From the IMG/VR virus record IMGVR_UViG_3300042391_000634, positions 124,001 to 188,000 of that record: DNA of 64,000 bases. One strand, 5' to 3'. Position 1 is the stretch's first letter, and each line of letters begins with the position of its first letter. Below are positions 2,835 through 34,088 of this stretch, one piece after another. The notes under the pieces are model-generated. The model saw only the letters and a list, made by a program, of their open reading frames with translations, made no database searches and had not been told where the DNA came from. Made by a program: the position numbers and the translations under genes.

Positions 2835-3140
2835 ATGTCGGAAATTAACTACGAAATATTAAGATTAGATGTTTTATCTAAACTCATCGATGAAAGGAAT
2901 ATTTCTTGTAAAAACAAGAAAGAAGAGATGATTAAGTATCTAAAAATGGATGATGAAGACAAATACATTAGAGAGACAACATACGAAAAGTATGGAGGTC
3001 AATTCTTAGTGGGTATAGACCTTAAAAACAAACCTCATTTATCTCAGATGAATAAGTTAGTGGAAAAGAAACAGGCCTTCTATAAAGGTCTGTATGCGTC
3101 TGATAGGATATATTTCGTATCAAATCAAAAATTAATTTAA
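2835..3140 (+). CDS. Small hypothetical protein with an N-terminal SAP/HeH-like helix-extension-helix
   Basis: YEILRLDVLSKLIDERNISCKNKKEEMIKYL fits the Y-x-x-L-x-x-x-x-L-x-x-L-x-x-x-R-x-I ... K-x-E-x-I-x-x-L pattern of SAP/Rho-N-like motifs. Confidence 0.5.
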   Translation: MSEINYEILRLDVLSKLIDERNISCKNKKEEMIKYLKMDDEDKYIRETTYEKYGGQFLVGIDLKNKPHLSQMNKLVEKKQAFYKGLYASDRIYFVSNQKLI

Positions 3141-9468: not shown

Positions 9469-10170
9469 TTATTCTAAAAATCCACCCAAAATACCGTCAT
9501 ATAGTTTCTTATAACGTTTAAGAGAGACTCTAATCTCTTTTGTTGATAAGGAGGTCATTTCTCGTAAAGAGAGTAAGATAAGGTTCTTATTGAATTTGTT
9601 ACCATCACCTACTTGAAATATCTTATCAAAATTACTGAAGATTTCAAGTAATGCGTAACCTAACTTTCTCTCGTTATCAGATAGATTTTTTTCTTTTTCA
9701 ATAAAATTTTCTAAATCAATTGTAAGTTTAGTGATAACAGAACTATAATCAATTACGAATTCATCCGTAACATATGAATGGTCTTTACTATCCTCAAAGT
9801 CGGAAGATATATCATCATAAGAAACCTGTCTATTCTGTTCTTTGGTATCTTTCTGTATTGCTCCCATAAGGTAGTTTTTACAGATGGTTCCAAAATATGA
9901 ATACGCTTTAGTATTCTTTGTGTGGTCAAATTTGTTAATCTTAGTTATAAGAAAAGACATTGTATCGGTATGAATTTCTTCAAATTCCATATCTTTTCTA
10001 TAAAGTTTATAACGTCGAATAATTGATTCAACCATTATAATTAGGGGTTCACGTAAATATTCATTGAATATCTTATTTCTTTCTGTTTCGTCACTACTTT
10101 CTAAGTAATTGACTACCGCCTTCTCTTGATCCTCCCCAAAATATATTTTTTGGGTTCTTGGTCTTGGCAT
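9469..10170 (-). CDS. gp55: Phage sigma factor, gp55-like (late transcription)
   Basis: Sigma region-2 pattern LIIMVESIIRRY...EEIHTDTMSFLITKINKFDHTKNTKAYSYFGTICKNYL, comparable to the gp55 F-D-x-x-K...A-Y-F-T-x-I motif; no clear region-4 HTH. Confidence 0.7.
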   Translation of the reverse strand: MPRPRTQKIYFGEDQEKAVVNYLESSDETERNKIFNEYLREPLIIMVESIIRRYKLYRKDMEFEEIHTDTMSFLITKINKFDHTKNTKAYSYFGTICKNYLMGAIQKDTKEQNRQVSYDDISSDFEDSKDHSYVTDEFVIDYSSVITKLTIDLENFIEKEKNLSDNERKLGYALLEIFSNFDKIFQVGDGNKFNKNLILLSLREMTSLSTKEIRVSLKRYKKLYDGILGGFLE

Positions 10171-29338: not shown

Positions 29339-30598
29339 ATGGGAATACCTAAAAGAAAAAACATGATTAATGTTTACGGAAATAAGGACACTTATGAAGG
29401 TGAACATATTGGAAAAAGAAGACAAGAGTTATTGGATAAAATAACAAAGTCAGATTCTTTTTTACCTGATTCTATTTTACATGATGATTTAGATAAGGGG
29501 ATGTTGGATTATGTAAAAGATAATTTAAAAGTGGTTTCTGATGCAGTTCAAATTCCAATTATAGAAAAAATTCTTACAATACAAAGATGGGGTGAATTTA
29601 CCTCAAATTGGTCTTTTTCTGATGATGACGGTAATGTTAAATTACCTTTTATTGCAATTATTAGAAAACCAGATGTACAATTTGGAACAAACCCATCAAT
29701 ACAAAGAACCATTCCTGATAGACATCAGTTTCATTATGCAACCGTTCCTACTTGGGATGGAACATCTGTGGGTGCTGATATATACAAAATACCACAACCA
29801 ATACCGTGTGATATTAGTTATGATATTACAATCGTTTGTAATAAGTTTAGAGATTTAAATAAGTTTAATAAAATTATTCTACAACATTTCTCATCTAGAC
29901 AAGCCTATACACAAGTTAAAGGACATTACATTCCTATTATATTAGAAACAATTGAAGATAACACACCAATGGATACAATAGATGGACGTAGATTTTATAT
30001 GCAAAACTATAAATGCACAATGTTAGGGTTTCTGATTGATAGTGATGAGTTTGAGGTAAAGCCAGCAATAAGTCGAGCATTTATTGTTAATGAATCTTTA
30101 GGTGGGGCAACTTTTAAGAAAAAATATGTAAATAAATCGGTAGACATAGTTATCTCAACAATCATAGCGGGAGAAAACCAAACAATATTTACGGTTGGAG
30201 AAAGTATTACAGTTTTATTTAATGTTGCAATAAATGGAATCGTTCAAGAAAAAGATATACATTATAGACATATTGGAGGAACATCTAATATTATATTTGA
30301 TTTAGTTGGAACTCCATCATTAGGTGATGTTATTACGATTAGTTATTATAAAGGAAAAAATAATAAGATGTATGATCAATTTGGTTATGAACTTACGGTT
30401 GGACGTGAAAGTTATACTTTTAATGGAACCAATTTATCTTTTACGTTATTACATAAAATTAGTTCTGTTATCAGTATTACCACAAATGGTTTGGTTGAAT
30501 ACAACGATGAGGGATATCAATTAACCGATACAAATGAGGTTACTTTAACAAGTGCACCAGTCAACGGGTCAAAAATGGATTTTGTTTATCTTTATTAA
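29339..30598 (+). CDS. Tail terminator/completion protein (gp15-like) with a C-terminal beta-repeat extension
   Basis: LPFIAIIR, PIPCDISYDITI, LGFLID core; position directly before the sheath gene. Confidence 0.6.
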   Translation: MGIPKRKNMINVYGNKDTYEGEHIGKRRQELLDKITKSDSFLPDSILHDDLDKGMLDYVKDNLKVVSDAVQIPIIEKILTIQRWGEFTSNWSFSDDDGNVKLPFIAIIRKPDVQFGTNPSIQRTIPDRHQFHYATVPTWDGTSVGADIYKIPQPIPCDISYDITIVCNKFRDLNKFNKIILQHFSSRQAYTQVKGHYIPIILETIEDNTPMDTIDGRRFYMQNYKCTMLGFLIDSDEFEVKPAISRAFIVNESLGGATFKKKYVNKSVDIVISTIIAGENQTIFTVGESITVLFNVAINGIVQEKDIHYRHIGGTSNIIFDLVGTPSLGDVITISYYKGKNNKMYDQFGYELTVGRESYTFNGTNLSFTLLHKISSVISITTNGLVEYNDEGYQLTDTNEVTLTSAPVNGSKMDFVYLY

Positions 30599-30753
30599 TC
30601 ATCTCCATAAATGTCCTTTTTCTTAGGTTTTACCAAATCCTCAATGTGTTTTTCTAAGACTTTATAAATTTTAAGTCCATTATTATCACAATAATTTTTT
30701 AGTATTTCATGGTGTTTTACACTTATTTTAACGTTTTTTTGATTCTTTTCCAT
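30595..30753 (-). CDS. 52-aa ribbon-helix-helix-like DNA-binding protein (below the ORF-track length cutoff)
   Basis: Translated by hand: MEKNQKNVKISVKHHEILKNYCDNNGLKIYKVLEKHIEDLVKPKKKDIYGDD; beta strand KNVKIS, helix A, G-L turn, helix B; TATTTAT box at 30771-30777 (minus). Confidence 0.7.
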   Translation of the reverse strand: MEKNQKNVKISVKHHEILKNYCDNNGLKIYKVLEKHIEDLVKPKKKDIYGDD

Positions 30754-30756
30754 AAT

Positions 30757-30830
30757 AAAGATATTAAAAGATAAATAACTATCTTTTTTAAAAAAGTTGG
30801 GAAATCTTTGATAAAAACAAAGATATTTAT
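30757..30830. promoter_or_regulatory. Divergent late promoters (RHH gene and sheath) with four AAAGATA boxes
   Basis: AAAGATA at 30757, 30767 and 30819, inverted TATCTTT at 30780; TATTTAT boxes at 30771-30777 (minus) and 30824-30830 (plus). Confidence 0.55.
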
Positions 30831-30869
30831 TAGATAAGTAATAAAATTAATTTAACCAAACAAAAATCA

Positions 30870-33767
30870 ATGGCAAGTAATAACAGAGTTTTCGTGTCTC
30901 CAGGTGTCTATACATCCGAGCTCGATTTAACATTTGTAGCACAGAGTGTAGGTGTTACCACATTAGGTTTATCAGGTGAGACTTTAAAAGGTCCAGCTTT
31001 TGAACCAATTTTAATTTCTAGTTTTGACGATTTTAAATTGTATTTTGGTAGTACATCACCAGAAAAAGATGGTAACGGTAATCCTAAATATGAATTAGGA
31101 TATGTTGCAAAATCATATTTACAAGAATCAAATCAATTATTCGTAACAAGAGTATTAGGTCTTACAGGATATAAACCATATAAAACATTCGGTATTAAAA
31201 CTATCGGAGGTGTTATATTACAAGAATATCAAACTATAACAGAATGGACAGGTACATCTGGATTAACACCGACAACAGTTGGTATTGATGATATATCTTT
31301 AATTTATAATCATTTGTCGAATAAACCGGCACATGATGGTACTATGATTACTGATTATATTGTTAAAAATTACAGTGGATTAACAAATGCAGATAATGGT
31401 AAGTGGTTTGTAATGGGAGCAATTCCATCTGAAGAAATATCATTACTACCAAGTTCAACTTTAGAACTTGAGTCTCCATTAACAGGAAAAGTTAATAGTG
31501 ATAATAATAATACTAAAGAATGGACTAATGTATTATTCAATTTAGCAACACCGAGTGATCACACAACTGTAGATGGTGTTTATTCATATTTATTTGAATG
31601 GAAAAGTGGTACAACTAAATTTGATGTAACAAGATTTAATTGGGATGCTGAATTGGCTGTAGATTATGATAACATAATTGTTGCCGCTTTTAGACCTAGA
31701 GGTCGTTACAGTGGACAAACATTAATTCATGAGGTTACAACAAATACGGGTTTCACTTTAACTGAGATTGATGATATGGAACATAATCCATTAGGAGAAT
31801 TTACAATAAATGTTGTAGGTCATACAGAAGGTGCAAAAGAATTTACATGTACATTTGACACCACTTCATCAAAATATATTACTAAAGTTTTAGGAGTTGA
31901 TGTTTTCGATAAAGATTATCGTGATTACCCCATTTATATTCATGAATCATATCCAAATTTTTTAAAGTCAGGATTTGAAAGAGGTTTAATTAGAGGTATT
32001 TCTATGGATGTTTCTTACGAGACAGAGGGAAATAATTTCTTACAACAATGGGACACAACAATTTCTCCAATGGTAGTTTCTGAAGTTCGTGGTGGTAGTG
32101 TTGCTGATTTATTCCAAGTTATTACAATTTCAGATGGTGAGGCCGCTAACTTTGAAGTAAAAATTAATATTCAAAACATTAATTTAGATACTATGGAGTT
32201 TGATTTAGTAGTTCGTGATTTTAATGATACTGATGACAATCAAGTTGCTTTAGAGAAATATACAAGATGTTCAATGAATCCAGATGTTCCAGGTTATATA
32301 GCTAAGAAAATAGGTACATCTGATGGTGAATATGCATTGGTTTCAAAAAGAATCATGTTAATGATGGCAGACGGAGCACCTGTGGATGCAATTCCAGCTG
32401 GATTTAAAGGTTTTGCTAACAATGAACAATTTGGGGCAGATAACGATACATTTGGTAGTATTATATATAAAACAAAATATAATGACGCTGGCGATGTTGT
32501 AACATATGATACAACAGGAGCACCTAATATTGAGGGTGGAGATAAAGTGAGAAAGGTTATTTTAGGATTATCAAGTACAGTTGGTTTTGACCGAGATTTG
32601 TTAAAATATAAAGGTGTAAATGCGTCAACTGAAACATTCGGTTTCCATTTATCCGTAAATGCGGCAACAATTACAGGTACAACTTTTCATACTACCGAAT
32701 ATGATTTAGAAGGACAAACTAATGAAGAAACAAATAAATTAACAAATATCAACTATCGTAAATTTGCTTTTGCAGTATATGGTGGTAGAGATGGTTGGGA
32801 CATTTATAGAAATGTTAGGACTAACGACGATCGTTATATTTTTGGTAAAACAACTTATAAGTCAGAAGTTTTACTTACAGGTGTGTTTAATCCAACTATC
32901 GGTAATTCTGACTATTATGCTTATTTACAAGGTATTGAAACATATTCAAACCCTGAAGCTGTTGATATTAACGTATTTGCAACCCCTGGTATTAACTTTT
33001 ACGACCATAGTTCTTTAGTTAATCAAGCAATTGACATGATTGAAACAGATAGAGCGGATTCTTTATATGTTATGAATTCACCAAATATCACAGGTCCTTC
33101 TGCAACGGAAGATATTGTAAATGCTTTAGACAGTGCTTCAATTGACTCTAACTACTCAGCAACATATTGGCCTTGGATTCAAGTAAGAGATGTAGATAAT
33201 GCAACTCAATTATATATCCCACCAACAGGTGAGGTATTGAAAAATATCGCCTTAACTGATAATGTATCATATCCTTGGTTCGCAGTTGCGGGTTACAGTA
33301 GAGGTTTGGTTAACGCAGTCAAAGCAACCAAAAAATTAACTTTAGACGATAGAGACGTATTATATAAGAATAGAATTAACCCAATTGCAACATTCTCTGA
33401 TACAGGAACCATTATTTGGGGTAACAAAACGTTACAAGTTAGAGAATCTGCACTTGATAGAATCAACGTAAGAAGATTGTTATTAAGAGCAAGAAAGTTA
33501 ATTTCAGCTGTTTCTGTAAGATTATTGTTTGAACAAAACGATGACCAGGTAAGAAACGAATTCTTAAGATTGGTAAATCCTATCTTGGATGCAATTAAGA
33601 AAGAAAGAGGTTTGTATGACTTCCGTGTAACAGTATCTAACGATCCTGAGGATATCGACGCAAACACAATGAGAGGTAAGATTTACATCAAACCAACTCG
33701 TTCTCTTGAATACATCGATGTAGAATTCATTATTACTCCAACAGGAGCTTCATTTGAAAATATCTAA
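30870..33767 (+). CDS. gp18: Tail sheath protein (gp18 family)
   Basis: N-terminal FVSPGVYTSELDLT; C-terminal YWPWIQ...PPTG...WFAVAGYSRG...LYKNRINPI...WGNKTLQ...DRINVRRLL...IKPTRSLEYI. Confidence 0.97.
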   Translation: MASNNRVFVSPGVYTSELDLTFVAQSVGVTTLGLSGETLKGPAFEPILISSFDDFKLYFGSTSPEKDGNGNPKYELGYVAKSYLQESNQLFVTRVLGLTGYKPYKTFGIKTIGGVILQEYQTITEWTGTSGLTPTTVGIDDISLIYNHLSNKPAHDGTMITDYIVKNYSGLTNADNGKWFVMGAIPSEEISLLPSSTLELESPLTGKVNSDNNNTKEWTNVLFNLATPSDHTTVDGVYSYLFEWKSGTTKFDVTRFNWDAELAVDYDNIIVAAFRPRGRYSGQTLIHEVTTNTGFTLTEIDDMEHNPLGEFTINVVGHTEGAKEFTCTFDTTSSKYITKVLGVDVFDKDYRDYPIYIHESYPNFLKSGFERGLIRGISMDVSYETEGNNFLQQWDTTISPMVVSEVRGGSVADLFQVITISDGEAANFEVKINIQNINLDTMEFDLVVRDFNDTDDNQVALEKYTRCSMNPDVPGYIAKKIGTSDGEYALVSKRIMLMMADGAPVDAIPAGFKGFANNEQFGADNDTFGSIIYKTKYNDAGDVVTYDTTGAPNIEGGDKVRKVILGLSSTVGFDRDLLKYKGVNASTETFGFHLSVNAATITGTTFHTTEYDLEGQTNEETNKLTNINYRKFAFAVYGGRDGWDIYRNVRTNDDRYIFGKTTYKSEVLLTGVFNPTIGNSDYYAYLQGIETYSNPEAVDINVFATPGINFYDHSSLVNQAIDMIETDRADSLYVMNSPNITGPSATEDIVNALDSASIDSNYSATYWPWIQVRDVDNATQLYIPPTGEVLKNIALTDNVSYPWFAVAGYSRGLVNAVKATKKLTLDDRDVLYKNRINPIATFSDTGTIIWGNKTLQVRESALDRINVRRLLLRARKLISAVSVRLLFEQNDDQVRNEFLRLVNPILDAIKKERGLYDFRVTVSNDPEDIDANTMRGKIYIKPTRSLEYIDVEFIITPTGASFENI

Positions 33768-33791
33768 TATAAAAGGAGATATAAAAAGAAG

Positions 33792-33820
33792 AAGGATATC
33801 AGAAATGGTATCCTTTTTTT
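33792..33820 (+). terminator. Intrinsic terminator after the sheath gene
   Basis: AAGGATATCA-GAAA-TGGTATCCTT followed by a T run. Confidence 0.85.
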
Positions 33821-33821
33821 G

Positions 33822-33837
33822 TGCTCCACGTGGAACC
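33822..33837. promoter_or_regulatory. parS-like palindrome TGCTCCACGTGGAACC
   Basis: 14/16 identity to the parS sequence TGTTCCACGTGGAACA with a perfect TCCACGTGGA core; intergenic. Confidence 0.6.
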
Positions 33838-33877
33838 ATATTATATAATAATTATATCTTTATAAGATACCCAGAAT

Positions 33878-33951
33878 ACTGGAACTAGATATACTAGTAT
33901 TTATTATTAATATTAATTTATTTAAGTAGAATGTTAAACTGGAACTAGATA
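33878..33951 (+). repeat. 14-bp direct repeat ACTGGAACTAGATA, 2 copies 60 bp apart, flanking an almost pure A/T tract
   Basis: Copies at 33878-33891 and 33938-33951. Confidence 0.85.
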
Positions 33952-34088
33952 CTGGGGCCTGTAAAAAACTACGAAAAATAATTGACATAAACAACCTTTT
34001 TCATATAATTAATCTAAAATAAAATTATTTTCCTTTTGGATATATTTATAAGAAAGTAAATAACTAAAAAAATTTAACAACACACAAT

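What the first reader, a model, noticed from the sequence alone, without database searches (positions are those of the whole stretch)
30595..30830. Hidden ribbon-helix-helix gene with a candidate operator over the tail-sheath promoter
Seen: a 52-aa minus-strand ORF missed by the track has an RHH-like pattern and its own TATTTAT box. The 75-bp gap to the divergent sheath promoter has four AAAGATA boxes, including an 8-bp inverted pair (AAAAGATA-N6-TATCTTTT, 30766-30787); two boxes overlap the two TATTTAT elements. Known: RHH proteins (CopG, Arc, Omega) bind arrays of short direct and inverted repeats and usually autoregulate. Inference: a feedback switch tuning sheath expression, unusual for T4-like late genes. 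Omega-like RHH proteins also act in partition, which is notable given the parS-like site 3 kb away.
Basis: partly seen in the sequence, partly recalled or inferred. Interest (0 to 1): 0.6.

Follow-up and report, generated by a model that had tools for sequence, protein, structure and literature searches.

The report
Small phage repressor-like gene beside sheath promoter
A conserved 52-residue ribbon-helix-helix protein of a 335-kb lake-water jumbo phage sits back to back with the tail-sheath gene, and the short gap between them holds a unique, rigidly spaced array of AAAGATA boxes that most likely is its operator, so it probably controls itself and the sheath's late promoter; the kind of regulator is ordinary, its target is not.

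Summary
The 52-aa minus-strand ORF (30595-30753) is a real gene. It has at least 200 homologs of about the same length, is syntenic in 71 of 71 related loci with enough flank, and shows pN 0.12 against a saturated pS 0.73. Profile, PDB and fold searches all point weakly but consistently to a ribbon-helix-helix (RHH) fold. No curated cut-off is reached, and the dimer test gave no verdict.

The 116-bp gap to the sheath gene holds five to six AAAGATA/TATCTTT boxes. It is the only such cluster in the 335,630-bp genome (expected 0.005-0.014). Across 40 distinct variants the boxes are 93-99% conserved, against 58-85% for the spacers, with core spacing fixed at 10, (10), 11 bp.

TATTTAT is the phage's late promoter box, and a gp55-like sigma is encoded. 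The 22 nt upstream of the sheath's box are 96% conserved, against 76% at the tube promoter.

Best reading: an autoregulated RHH regulator that also modulates, probably represses, the sheath late promoter, like SvtR and AvtR of archaeal viruses. DNA binding, the sign of the effect and the RHH promoter are all unproven. The partition idea is not supported: no ParA was found and the repeats are not contiguous. Verdict: a new member of a known kind.

The parts
30595..30753 (-). 52-aa ribbon-helix-helix gene. Predicted strand is residues 6-11 (KNVKIS), helix A 12-25, turn with invariant G26, helix B 29-41, then a conserved basic/acidic tail 42-52 (KPKKKDIYGDD). Its stop overlaps the stop of the convergent 419-aa gene (29339-30598).
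   Evidence: ORF. At least 200 homologs of 49-70 aa at 69-96% identity. Present in 71 of 71 related loci with enough flank, always between the 419-aa gene and the sheath gene. pN 0.12 against pS 0.73. Alignment A1 gives invariant K6 N7 K9 I10 H14 H15 K19 C22 G26 K28 I37 D47 Y49. AlphaFold2 topology. Hits to RHH proteins. Single copy in the genome.
30757..30763 (+). Box D2, AAAGATA. It starts 3 nt after the RHH start codon, in what would be the RHH mRNA leader.
   Evidence: 97.5% conserved across 40 variants. 10 bp from D3 in every variant. Relatives with 131-136-bp gaps carry one more direct box 10 bp further on.
30766..30773 (+). Box D3, AAAAGATA. It is the left arm of the 22-bp palindrome D3-N6-I1.
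   Evidence: (pair I14). 93% conserved.
30771..30777 (-). TATTTAT on the minus strand, 17 nt before the RHH ATG. It is a candidate late-type promoter of the RHH gene and lies in the centre of the D3-I1 palindrome.
   Evidence: Present in only 26 of 40 distinct variants, so it is uncertain as a promoter.
30780..30787 (-). Box I1. It reads TATCTTTT on the + strand, an AAAAGATA box in the opposite orientation, and forms the right arm of the palindrome.
   Evidence: 98% conserved. Its core is 11 bp from the D3 core in nearly all variants.
30783..30796 (.). T6A6 tract (CTTTTTTAAAAAAG) between the two groups of boxes. It is a possible intrinsic bend or spacer.
   Evidence: pair I17. Only partly conserved (30787-30800: 71%).
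30802..30810 (-). Box I2, AAATCTTTG, in inverted orientation. It is the left arm of the pair ATCTTTG-N7-CAAAGAT and lies about 27 to 34 nt upstream of the inferred sheath transcript start.
   Evidence: pair I15. 97% conserved. The pair is unique in the genome.
30818..30825 (+). Box D4, CAAAGATA, overlapping the sheath TATTTAT by 2 nt. Read on the minus strand it is TATCTTTG, a perfect Bacteroidota-type -7 element pointing towards the RHH gene.
   Evidence: 99% conserved. -7 consensus from PMC6847099 and PMC2483708. No -33 TTTG at the usual 19-nt spacing, and 64 nt from the RHH ATG.
30824..30830 (+). Late promoter box TATTTAT of the tail-sheath gene.
   Evidence: 100% conserved. TATTTAT occurs in 75 of 203 upstream regions against 5.7 expected, with no conserved upstream element. 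It precedes terminase, portal, fibre, baseplate, sheath and tube genes.
30831..30838 (+). Possible sixth box D5, TAGATAAG. Its AGATA core is 11 bp after the D4 core, at about the inferred transcript start.
   Evidence: Present only in the closer relatives with 120-122-bp gaps; the 133-bp group has AGAATAA there.
30831..30869 (+). Conserved sheath leader. At 39 nt from TATTTAT to the ATG it is among the longest in the genome. It holds the near-invariant blocks AAGTAAT and AACCAAAC.
   Evidence: 83% mean conservation. (distance distribution: 33 of 75 late boxes lie within 8 nt of the ATG).
30870..33767 (+). Tail-sheath gene (965 aa), the presumed regulated gene.
   Evidence: Pfam Phage_sheath_1 and 1C, PHROG 23. 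Metatranscriptome contigs of relatives cover it.
9469..10170 (-). Context: gp55-like late sigma factor gene, the likely reader of TATTTAT.
   Evidence: Pfam Sigma70_r2 at 21.3 bits, below the cut-off. PHROG 234 'late sigma transcription factor', E 9.4e-5.

Best explanation
The 52-residue protein is a ribbon-helix-helix DNA-binding protein.

Inferred mechanism:
- It dimerises through its N-terminal strand. N7, K9 and S11 face the DNA; V8 and I10 face the core.
- Dimers bind side by side to the AAAGATA boxes in the 116-bp gap between its own gene and the sheath gene.
- The group next to its own start codon (two direct boxes 10 bp apart plus the 22-bp palindrome AAAAGATA-N6-TATCTTTT) covers every candidate promoter element and the leader of its own gene. 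The protein would therefore limit its own synthesis.
- The second group (ATCTTTG-N7-CAAAGAT, plus a weaker box after the promoter) covers roughly -34 to -11 and abuts the sheath's TATTTAT late promoter box. Occupancy there would most likely hinder the phage-sigma RNA polymerase and so delay or damp sheath synthesis.

Shown:
- The gene is real and under purifying selection.
- The fold evidence points to RHH.
- The array is unique in the genome, phased, and conserved far above the neutral level.
- The sheath promoter's upstream block is special among late promoters.

Inferred, not shown:
- Binding of this protein to these boxes.
- The sign of the effect.
- The timing of expression.
For: Gene:
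- At least 200 homologs of about 52 aa.
- Fixed synteny in 71 of 71 loci with enough flank.
- pN 0.12 against pS 0.73.

Fold:
- PHROG Arc-like repressor, E 0.0013, and Pfam RepB-RCR_reg, E 0.0096.
- The profile hits ParG, SvtR and omega in the same register.
- The model has an extended N-terminus plus two helices.
- RHH proteins fill the Foldseek top ranks and about 40 of the top 50 in the wide search.

Array:
- It is the only cluster in 335 kb, with an expectation of 0.005-0.014.
- Boxes are 93-99% conserved against 58-85% for spacers, although synonymous sites are saturated.
- Core spacing is fixed at 10, (10), 11 bp in nearly all of the 40 variants (36 of 40). Whole 10-bp units are gained or lost.
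- The most divergent locus (L076) rearranges the boxes but keeps an AAAGATA-N6-TATCTTT unit.

Promoter:
- TATTTAT is the late box, and a gp55-like sigma is encoded.
- Late promoters have no conserved upstream element. Yet the 22 nt upstream of the sheath box are 96% conserved, against 76% at the tube promoter in the same phages.

Precedent:
- The viral RHH proteins SvtR and AvtR repress their own gene and act on a structural gene.
- AvtR footprints about 100 nt between two promoters (PMC5569661).
Against: - No sequence match reaches a curated cut-off (Pfam 16.3 bits against 21).
- Fold scores are low: Foldseek E above 1, Z at most 4.8.
- The homodimer job gave no verdict.
- Nothing ties the protein to the boxes except adjacency. 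Both are nearly invariant, so no co-variation test is possible.
- The two inverted pairs have opposite polarity and different spacers. One binding geometry therefore cannot fit both.
- AAAGA just before TATTTAT also occurs at other late promoters, so box D4 may be partly promoter context.
- The whole gap, including the sheath leader, is conserved at 83%, so conservation alone is not specific to the boxes.
- Two lake metatranscriptome contig sets of relatives cover sheath and tube but not the RHH ORF. This is weak evidence: they are contigs only.
Confidence: 0.55

Rival explanations
1. The RHH protein binds the array but activates the sheath late promoter, or activates at low and represses at high occupancy. 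It would sit at about -30, where this promoter class has no -35 element. It would act like a class II activator, like MotA at T4 middle promoters, or like AvtR.
For: Box I2 is centred near -30 and the block ends at -11. Late promoters here have no other upstream element. The sheath is needed in very large amounts and its transcripts are abundant in lake metatranscriptome contigs. AvtR both activates and represses. The conserved C-terminal tail could be a contact peptide.
Against: Most RHH regulators are repressors. D4 overlaps the TATTTAT box, and a further box lies at the inferred start site in the closer relatives. That is repressor-like geometry. No interaction partner was tested.
Confidence: 0.15
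2. The protein only autoregulates through the boxes next to its own start (D2, D3, I1). The invariant block upstream of the sheath TATTTAT is an intrinsic part of an unusually strong late promoter, or the site of another factor.
For: The three left boxes form the regular 10-10-11 array. The right pair has the opposite polarity and a different spacer. AAAGA before TATTTAT recurs at other late promoters.
Against: The right pair uses the same 6-mer (AAAGAT/ATCTTT) as the left boxes. It is unique in the genome. No other late promoter has a conserved upstream block.
Confidence: 0.17
3. The boxes are not this protein's target. They could be iterons of a replication origin, sites for a host or other phage protein, or decoys of the host -7 element. 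The RHH protein would act elsewhere.
For: Phased direct repeats beside an A/T tract resemble iterons. The box is the reverse complement of the host-type -7 core TATCTTT.
Against: There is no skew change at the site beyond that of gene orientation. No replication gene adjoins it. The array and the RHH gene are inseparable in all 71 loci. There is no other box cluster in the genome for the protein to bind.
Confidence: 0.08
4. Omega/ParG-like centromere-binding protein of a type Ib partition system, with the array as a centromere.
For: ParG and omega are the best PDB sequence and fold matches. Omega also binds 7-bp repeats in both orientations.
Against: No ParA/Walker partition ATPase (PF13614, PF01656) is found in a genome rated 100% complete, while the controls were positive. 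The repeats are 10-11 bp apart, not contiguous. Only five residues precede the strand, so there is no ParA-stimulating tail. The genes around it are virion genes of a lytic-type jumbo phage.
Confidence: 0.03
5. RHH antitoxin of a toxin-antitoxin pair.
For: Many fold hits are RHH antitoxins such as TacA, ParD, VapB and MazE.
Against: No co-oriented neighbour gene exists. The ORF is flanked by a convergent 419-aa gene and the divergent sheath gene in all loci. Its tail after helix B is only 11 residues.
Confidence: 0.02

Closest known systems
SvtR (SIRV1 gp08) and AvtR (AFV6 gp29), ribbon-helix-helix regulators of archaeal viruses
   Same: They are small virus-encoded RHH proteins. They repress their own gene and act on the promoter of a virion structural gene. 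AvtR protects about 100 nt between two promoters and is thought to spread from strong to weaker sites (PMC5569661). SvtR (2kel) and AvtR (4hv0) are among the sequence and fold hits.
   Different: They are archaeal viruses with TATA/BRE promoters. Their operators are different imperfect inverted repeats. AvtR is a tandem RHH monomer. There is no detectable sequence relationship beyond the fold. Here the target is a bacterial-phage late promoter, probably read by a phage sigma.
Arc and Mnt repressors of phage P22 (immI region)
   Same: They are phage RHH repressors of about 53 aa. Two dimers bind a roughly 21-bp palindromic operator over a promoter between divergent genes, and they autoregulate (my own knowledge). 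PHROG 'Arc-like repressor' is the best family hit (E 0.0013), and Arc (1arq) is in the fold list. The D3-N6-I1 palindrome here is 22 bp.
   Different: The match is far below family level. Arc and Mnt control an antirepressor in a temperate phage, not a structural late gene. Here additional direct repeats and a second inverted pair extend the operator to about 80 bp.
Omega (pSM19035) and ParG (TP228)
   Same: They are RHH proteins that bind arrays of short repeats in direct and inverted orientation and repress several promoters. They are the best PDB matches by sequence profile and Foldseek.
   Different: Omega heptads are contiguous, whereas these boxes are 10-11 bp apart. Both proteins work with a ParA ATPase, and none is present here. 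Both have long flexible N-terminal tails.
CopG / RepB-RCR_reg (PF10723) plasmid copy-number repressors
   Same: This is the only Pfam family hit (E 0.0096, residues 7-40). Some homologs carry the precomputed PF10723 label. It is a small RHH repressor that binds over its own promoter.
   Different: The score is below the curated cut-off (16.3 against 21 bits). There is no replication gene downstream, and the context is a phage virion module.
T4 late transcription (gp55 sigma, TATAAATA box)
   Same: An 8-bp A/T box (here TATTTATA) a few to about 40 nt before structural genes. There is no -35-like element, and a gp55-like sigma is encoded.
   Different: As far as I know, T4 late promoters have no gene-specific DNA-binding regulator. 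No gp45-type clamp was detected here by Pfam models.

Membership tests
Ribbon-helix-helix (Arc/MetJ/CopG) superfamily | N-terminal strand with alternating polar and hydrophobic residues, then two helices joined by a short turn with a conserved glycine | tested here: met
   KNVKIS (6-11), helix 12-25, invariant G26, helix 29-41 in A1 and the AlphaFold2 model.
Ribbon-helix-helix (Arc/MetJ/CopG) superfamily | Significant sequence match to a curated RHH family | tested here: inconclusive
   Pfam RepB-RCR_reg 16.3 bits, below the cut-off of 21. PHROG Arc-like repressor E 0.0013. PDB profile hits ParG at E 0.05, SvtR at 0.13 and omega at 0.7-1.2.
Ribbon-helix-helix (Arc/MetJ/CopG) superfamily | Structural similarity to solved RHH proteins | tested here: inconclusive
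   RHH entries fill the top of both searches. Scores are low for so small a monomer model: TM 0.5-0.63, E above 1, Z at most 4.8.
Ribbon-helix-helix (Arc/MetJ/CopG) superfamily | Homodimer formed by pairing of the two N-terminal strands | tested here: inconclusive
   The complex job scored 0.38 against a mark of 0.42, with controls at 0.00. The tool's verdict was 'no answer'.
Ribbon-helix-helix (Arc/MetJ/CopG) superfamily | Sequence-specific binding to repeated operator sites | not testable with these tools
   A suitable repeated array adjoins the gene. Binding itself needs EMSA or footprinting.
Type Ib partition centromere-binding proteins (omega, ParG) | Partner Walker-type ParA ATPase encoded with it | tested here: not met
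   No PF13614 or PF01656 match in the complete genome. Controls were positive in 14 of 14 genomes.
Type Ib partition centromere-binding proteins (omega, ParG) | Contiguous short repeats as centromere, and a flexible N-terminal tail that stimulates ParA | tested here: not met
   Boxes are spaced 10-11 bp. Only 5 residues precede the strand.
Type II antitoxins with an RHH domain | Co-transcribed toxin gene next to it, and a C-terminal toxin-binding extension | tested here: not met
   The neighbours are convergent and divergent virion genes in all loci. The tail is 11 residues.
T4-type late promoter (for the sheath promoter) | Single A/T-rich box near -10 before virion genes, no -35 element, and a phage gp55-like sigma | tested here: met
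   TATTTAT occurs in 75 of 203 upstream regions against 5.7 expected, before terminase, portal, fibres, baseplate, sheath and tube. There is no conserved upstream element. PHROG 234 late sigma, E 9.4e-5.
T4-type late promoter (for the sheath promoter) | Sliding-clamp (gp45) co-activation | tested here: not met
   No PF02916 or PF09116 match. A divergent clamp is not excluded.

The most novel reading that the evidence does not exclude
The protein would be the first gene-specific DNA-binding regulator described for a T4-type (gp55-like sigma) late promoter. It would time or cap sheath synthesis in a widespread group of freshwater jumbo phages. Its box is also the reverse complement of the host-type -7 core: TATCTTTG heads 10 of the phage's 41 TAnnTTTG elements, and one such element overlaps the sheath TATTTAT back to back. 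The same protein could therefore compete with the host sigma at those early promoters. It would then act as a switch between host-sigma and phage-sigma transcription.
Probability: 0.1. Interest if true: 0.7.

Novelty: new member of a known kind. Interest (0 to 1): 0.45.

Why it matters
Late genes of T4-like phages are thought to be switched on as a block by a phage sigma, without gene-specific regulators. A conserved small repressor-like protein placed on the sheath promoter would show that at least one structural gene is tuned separately in these jumbo phages. One possible purpose is to keep sheath subunits from accumulating before baseplate and tube are ready.

It also gives an unannotated protein family a testable function and a defined 80-bp target. 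The family has at least 200 members in lake metagenomes, and some are misnamed 'coproporphyrinogen III oxidase'.

The promoter analysis done along the way (a TATTTAT late box, and TTTG-N19-TAnnTTTG early promoters) points to a Bacteroidota host for an uncultured 335-kb phage.

Tried and rejected
- **Phage database search.** tblastn of the ORF found no match. blastn of the locus found only a 49-nt tube match to Cronobacter phage GAP32. There is therefore no cultured relative to lean on.
- **Homodimer prediction.** No verdict; not used as evidence either way.
- **Reads.** Only contig sets were available. Two lake metatranscriptomes hold relatives' sheath and tube sequences but nothing over 30185-30715. 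Contigs cannot show absence, starts or strand, so this settles nothing.
- **Rfam on 30400-31000.** Only a chance-level hit.
- **Sigma-70 and terminator consensus scan.** Nothing above the shuffled background.
- **Host-type promoter for the RHH gene.** The minus-strand TATCTTTG (30825-30818) is a perfect -7 box. However, it lacks the TTTG(G)AATAT -33 element that the phage's other host-type promoters keep at 19 nt, and it lies further from its ATG than in most of them. The conserved TTTGG on the minus strand is 31 nt away. It stays as a possibility, not a finding.
- **Window-wide AAAGATA enrichment.** Rejected as evidence because most copies are Lys-Asp codons.
- **Origin or iteron reading.** No support from skew.
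- **Partition and antitoxin readings.** Rejected.
- **Large profile search of protein representatives.** Not run, since the word search already gave ample relatives.
Full report
**1. What is in the sequence**

The window is part of a 335,630-bp virus record with 31% G+C, rated complete. The record is found in lake-water metagenomes.

- At 30595-30753 on the minus strand there is an ATG-started ORF of 52 codons.
- Its stop overlaps the stop of a convergent 419-aa gene (29339-30598).
- Its start faces the 965-aa tail-sheath gene (30870-33767; Pfam sheath domains, PHROG 23) across a 116-bp gap.

The gap holds these elements:

| Element | Sequence | Position |
|---|---|---|
| D2 | AAAGATA | 30757-63 |
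| D3 | AAAAGATA | 30766-73 |
| I1 | TATCTTTT | 30780-87 |
| T6A6 tract | CTTTTTTAAAAAAG | 30783-96 |
| I2 | AAATCTTTG | 30802-10 |
| D4 | CAAAGATA | 30818-25 |
| Sheath late box | TATTTAT | 30824-30 |
| D5 (weaker) | TAGATAAG | 30831-38 |

A second TATTTAT lies on the minus strand at 30771-77, 17 nt before the small ORF's ATG. D3 with I1 makes a perfect 8+8 inverted repeat with a 6-bp spacer. I2 with D4 makes a 7+7 inverted repeat of the opposite polarity with a 7-bp spacer. It is one base off for the minus-strand box, and it missed I2 and D5.

**2. Is it more than chance?**

AAAGATA is twice as common in the window as in shuffles. Most copies are Lys-Asp codons inside genes, so I do not count that.

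The cluster is what matters. In the whole genome this is the only place with four or more boxes within 75 bp, and it lies fully between genes. The expectation is 0.005 for four 7-mers and 0.014 for five 6-mers.

**3. The ORF is a gene**

- A word search found at least 200 proteins of 49-70 residues at 69-96% identity, on contigs of up to 330 kb.
- Of 80 related IMG/VR loci fetched with the sheath protein, all 71 with enough upstream flank have the ORF in the same place and orientation.
- Against the window's copy, the median synonymous difference is 0.73 (saturated). The non-synonymous difference is 0.12.
- The gene is single-copy.

**4. Fold**

- The alignment (A1) shows an invariant KNVKI strand, HH at the start of helix A, an invariant glycine in the turn, an amphipathic helix B, and a conserved tail KPKKKDIYGDD.
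- Family scans give only weak hits, all to RHH families: PHROG Arc-like repressor (E 0.0013) and Pfam RepB-RCR_reg (E 0.0096, below cut-off).
- The profile finds ParG, SvtR and omega in the PDB, in the same register, at E 0.05 to 1.2.
- The AlphaFold2 model (pLDDT 72) has an extended N-terminus, two helices and a loose tail.
- Foldseek and the exhaustive aligner both return lists dominated by RHH proteins, with low scores as expected for 40 ordered residues.
- The dimer job gave no verdict.

I take the RHH fold as likely (about 0.85) but not proven.

**5. The array is a selected, phased element**

The 71 loci give 40 distinct versions of the gap.

- Synonymous sites are saturated, yet box columns are 93-99% identical to the window. 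The spacers between boxes are 58-85% identical.
- The (A/G)GATA cores are spaced 10, (10) and 11 bp in nearly all versions. Versions differ by having two or three direct boxes, which is gain or loss of a whole 10-bp unit.
- The most divergent locus (L076, protein 53% identical) has the boxes in another order but keeps an AAAGATA-N6-TATCTTT unit.

One turn of helix between sites, conserved cores with free spacers, and a variable unit number are what a cooperative protein-binding array looks like. This matches what RHH proteins are known to use (Schreiter and Drennan as cited there).

**6. Promoters of this phage**

Late class:
- TATTTAT, mostly TATTTATA, is in 75 of 203 upstream regions against 5.7 expected. 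It lies 4 to about 40 nt before the ATG, with no conserved element upstream of it.
- It precedes the large terminase, portal, tail fibres, baseplate wedge, sheath and tube genes.
- The phage encodes a gp55-like late sigma (window 9469-10170) and a second sigma-70-type factor.

Early class:
- A second class, TTTG-N19-TAnnTTTG about 20 nt before the ATG, matches the -33/-7 consensus of Bacteroidota (PMC6847099, PMC2483708).
- It precedes small unknown genes, a ParB-like gene and protease genes. This is the likely early class and points to a Bacteroidota host.

**7. Why the sheath promoter looks regulated**

The 22 nt upstream of the sheath TATTTAT (I2, its spacer and D4) are 96% conserved. The same stretch at the tube late promoter, in the same set of phages, is 76% conserved, and the 12 nt next to the tube box are roughly half conserved.

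The I2-D4 pair uses the same 6-mer as the boxes by the RHH gene, and it is unique in the genome. Taking the start about 6-7 nt after the box, as in T4 (my own knowledge), the block covers about -34 to -11. In the closer relatives D5 sits on the start site.

**8. What drives the RHH gene is open**

- The minus-strand TATTTAT sits exactly in the middle of the D3-I1 palindrome, which is classic autoregulatory geometry. It is present in only 26 of 40 versions.
- Read on the minus strand, D4 is TATCTTTG, a perfect host-type -7 element. It overlaps the sheath TATTTAT back to back by two bases. It has no -33 element at the right distance and is 64 nt from the ATG.
- Either way, every candidate element is under a box.

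**9. Mechanism I commit to**

The protein is an RHH dimer that binds the boxes cooperatively. It shuts down its own transcription through D2, D3 and I1. Through I2, D4 and D5 it hinders the phage-sigma polymerase at the sheath promoter, so that sheath synthesis is delayed or capped.

Probabilities:
- About 0.55 for the whole statement.
- About 0.65 that the array is this protein's operator.
- About 0.45-0.5 that the sheath promoter is affected.

Rivals: activation instead of repression (0.15); autoregulation only (0.17); boxes that serve something else (0.08); partition (0.03); antitoxin (0.02).

**10. Comparison with what is known**

- By function, the nearest cases are SvtR and AvtR of archaeal viruses. 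By size and operator form, they are Arc and Mnt of P22.
- Omega and ParG are the best sequence and fold matches. The partition reading fails the membership test: there is no ParA, the repeats are not contiguous, and there is no N-terminal tail.
- No cultured phage has a homolog.
- I file it as a new member of a known kind: an RHH regulator with a repeat operator. The unusual target is a gp55-type late promoter of a structural gene in a lytic-type jumbo phage.

**11. Limits**

- No binding, expression timing or transcript start could be tested.
- The reads tool gave contigs only.
- The protein's strand and the box core are both invariant, so co-variation could not be used.

Noticed in passing
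genome-wide; in the window e.g. upstream of 2835-3140 (+); outside it at genome 50986, 59649, 328427 (+) and 30907, 32986, 33596, 39207 (-): A second promoter class, TTTG(G)AATAT-N-TAnnTTTG about 20 nt before start codons, matches the Bacteroidota -33/-7 consensus. It suggests that the uncultured 335-kb phage infects a member of the Bacteroidota. Genes behind it are small unknowns, a ParB-like protein and FtsH/Lon- and ClpP-like proteases.
   Followed up: partly
genome-wide, 75 upstream regions: 33 of 75 TATTTAT late boxes lie only 4-8 nt before the ATG. Many late mRNAs must therefore be leaderless or nearly so. The sheath's 39-nt conserved leader is among the longest.
   Followed up: partly
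window 33768-34088 (sheath-tube gap): A G+C-containing hairpin followed by a T run lies at 33789-33818, just after the sheath stop, and is a likely terminator. In relatives, a conserved CTACGAAAAATAATTGA-N-AATCAAG motif with a TTGA/TCAA palindrome lies about 85 nt before the tube ATG.
   Followed up: partly
window 9469-10170 (-) and genome 214427-215236 (+): There are two sigma-factor genes. One is gp55-like (PHROG 234 late sigma). The other is a full sigma-70-type factor (Sigma70_r2 at 63 bits, PHROG 351). No gp45-type clamp was found by Pfam models.
   Followed up: partly
window 30595-30627 (residues 42-52 of the RHH protein): The tail after helix B, KPKKKDIYGDD, is as conserved as the DNA-binding core: K42, P43, K44, K45 and G50 are nearly invariant, and D47 and Y49 are invariant. 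It looks like a docking peptide for an unknown partner.
   Followed up: no
window 30771-30788 and 30813-30830: An 18-nt mirror repeat (83% complementary) makes the two divergent TATTTAT boxes each preceded by an AAAGATA box in the same relative orientation (pair I1).
   Followed up: partly
homologs P0019, P0020, P0045, P0056, P0073, P0098: One source names several 52-aa homologs 'coproporphyrinogen III oxidase'. This is surely a spurious transfer; the profile has a chance-level hit to that enzyme in the PDB (E 0.81).
   Followed up: no
window 30832 joined to 34086 in one DNA contig of run X2: A contig of a related phage joins the sheath promoter region to the tube gene start, skipping the sheath gene, with 32 other letters between. 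The matching side is only 20 letters, so it is probably a relative's similar leader rather than a deletion.
   Followed up: no
genome 35090-35836 (-), outside the window: A ParB-like protein (PHROG 12305, E 1e-35) lies behind a host-type promoter. No ParA was found in the genome, so it is more likely a ParB/sulfiredoxin-type nuclease or early DNA-binding protein than a partition protein.
   Followed up: no
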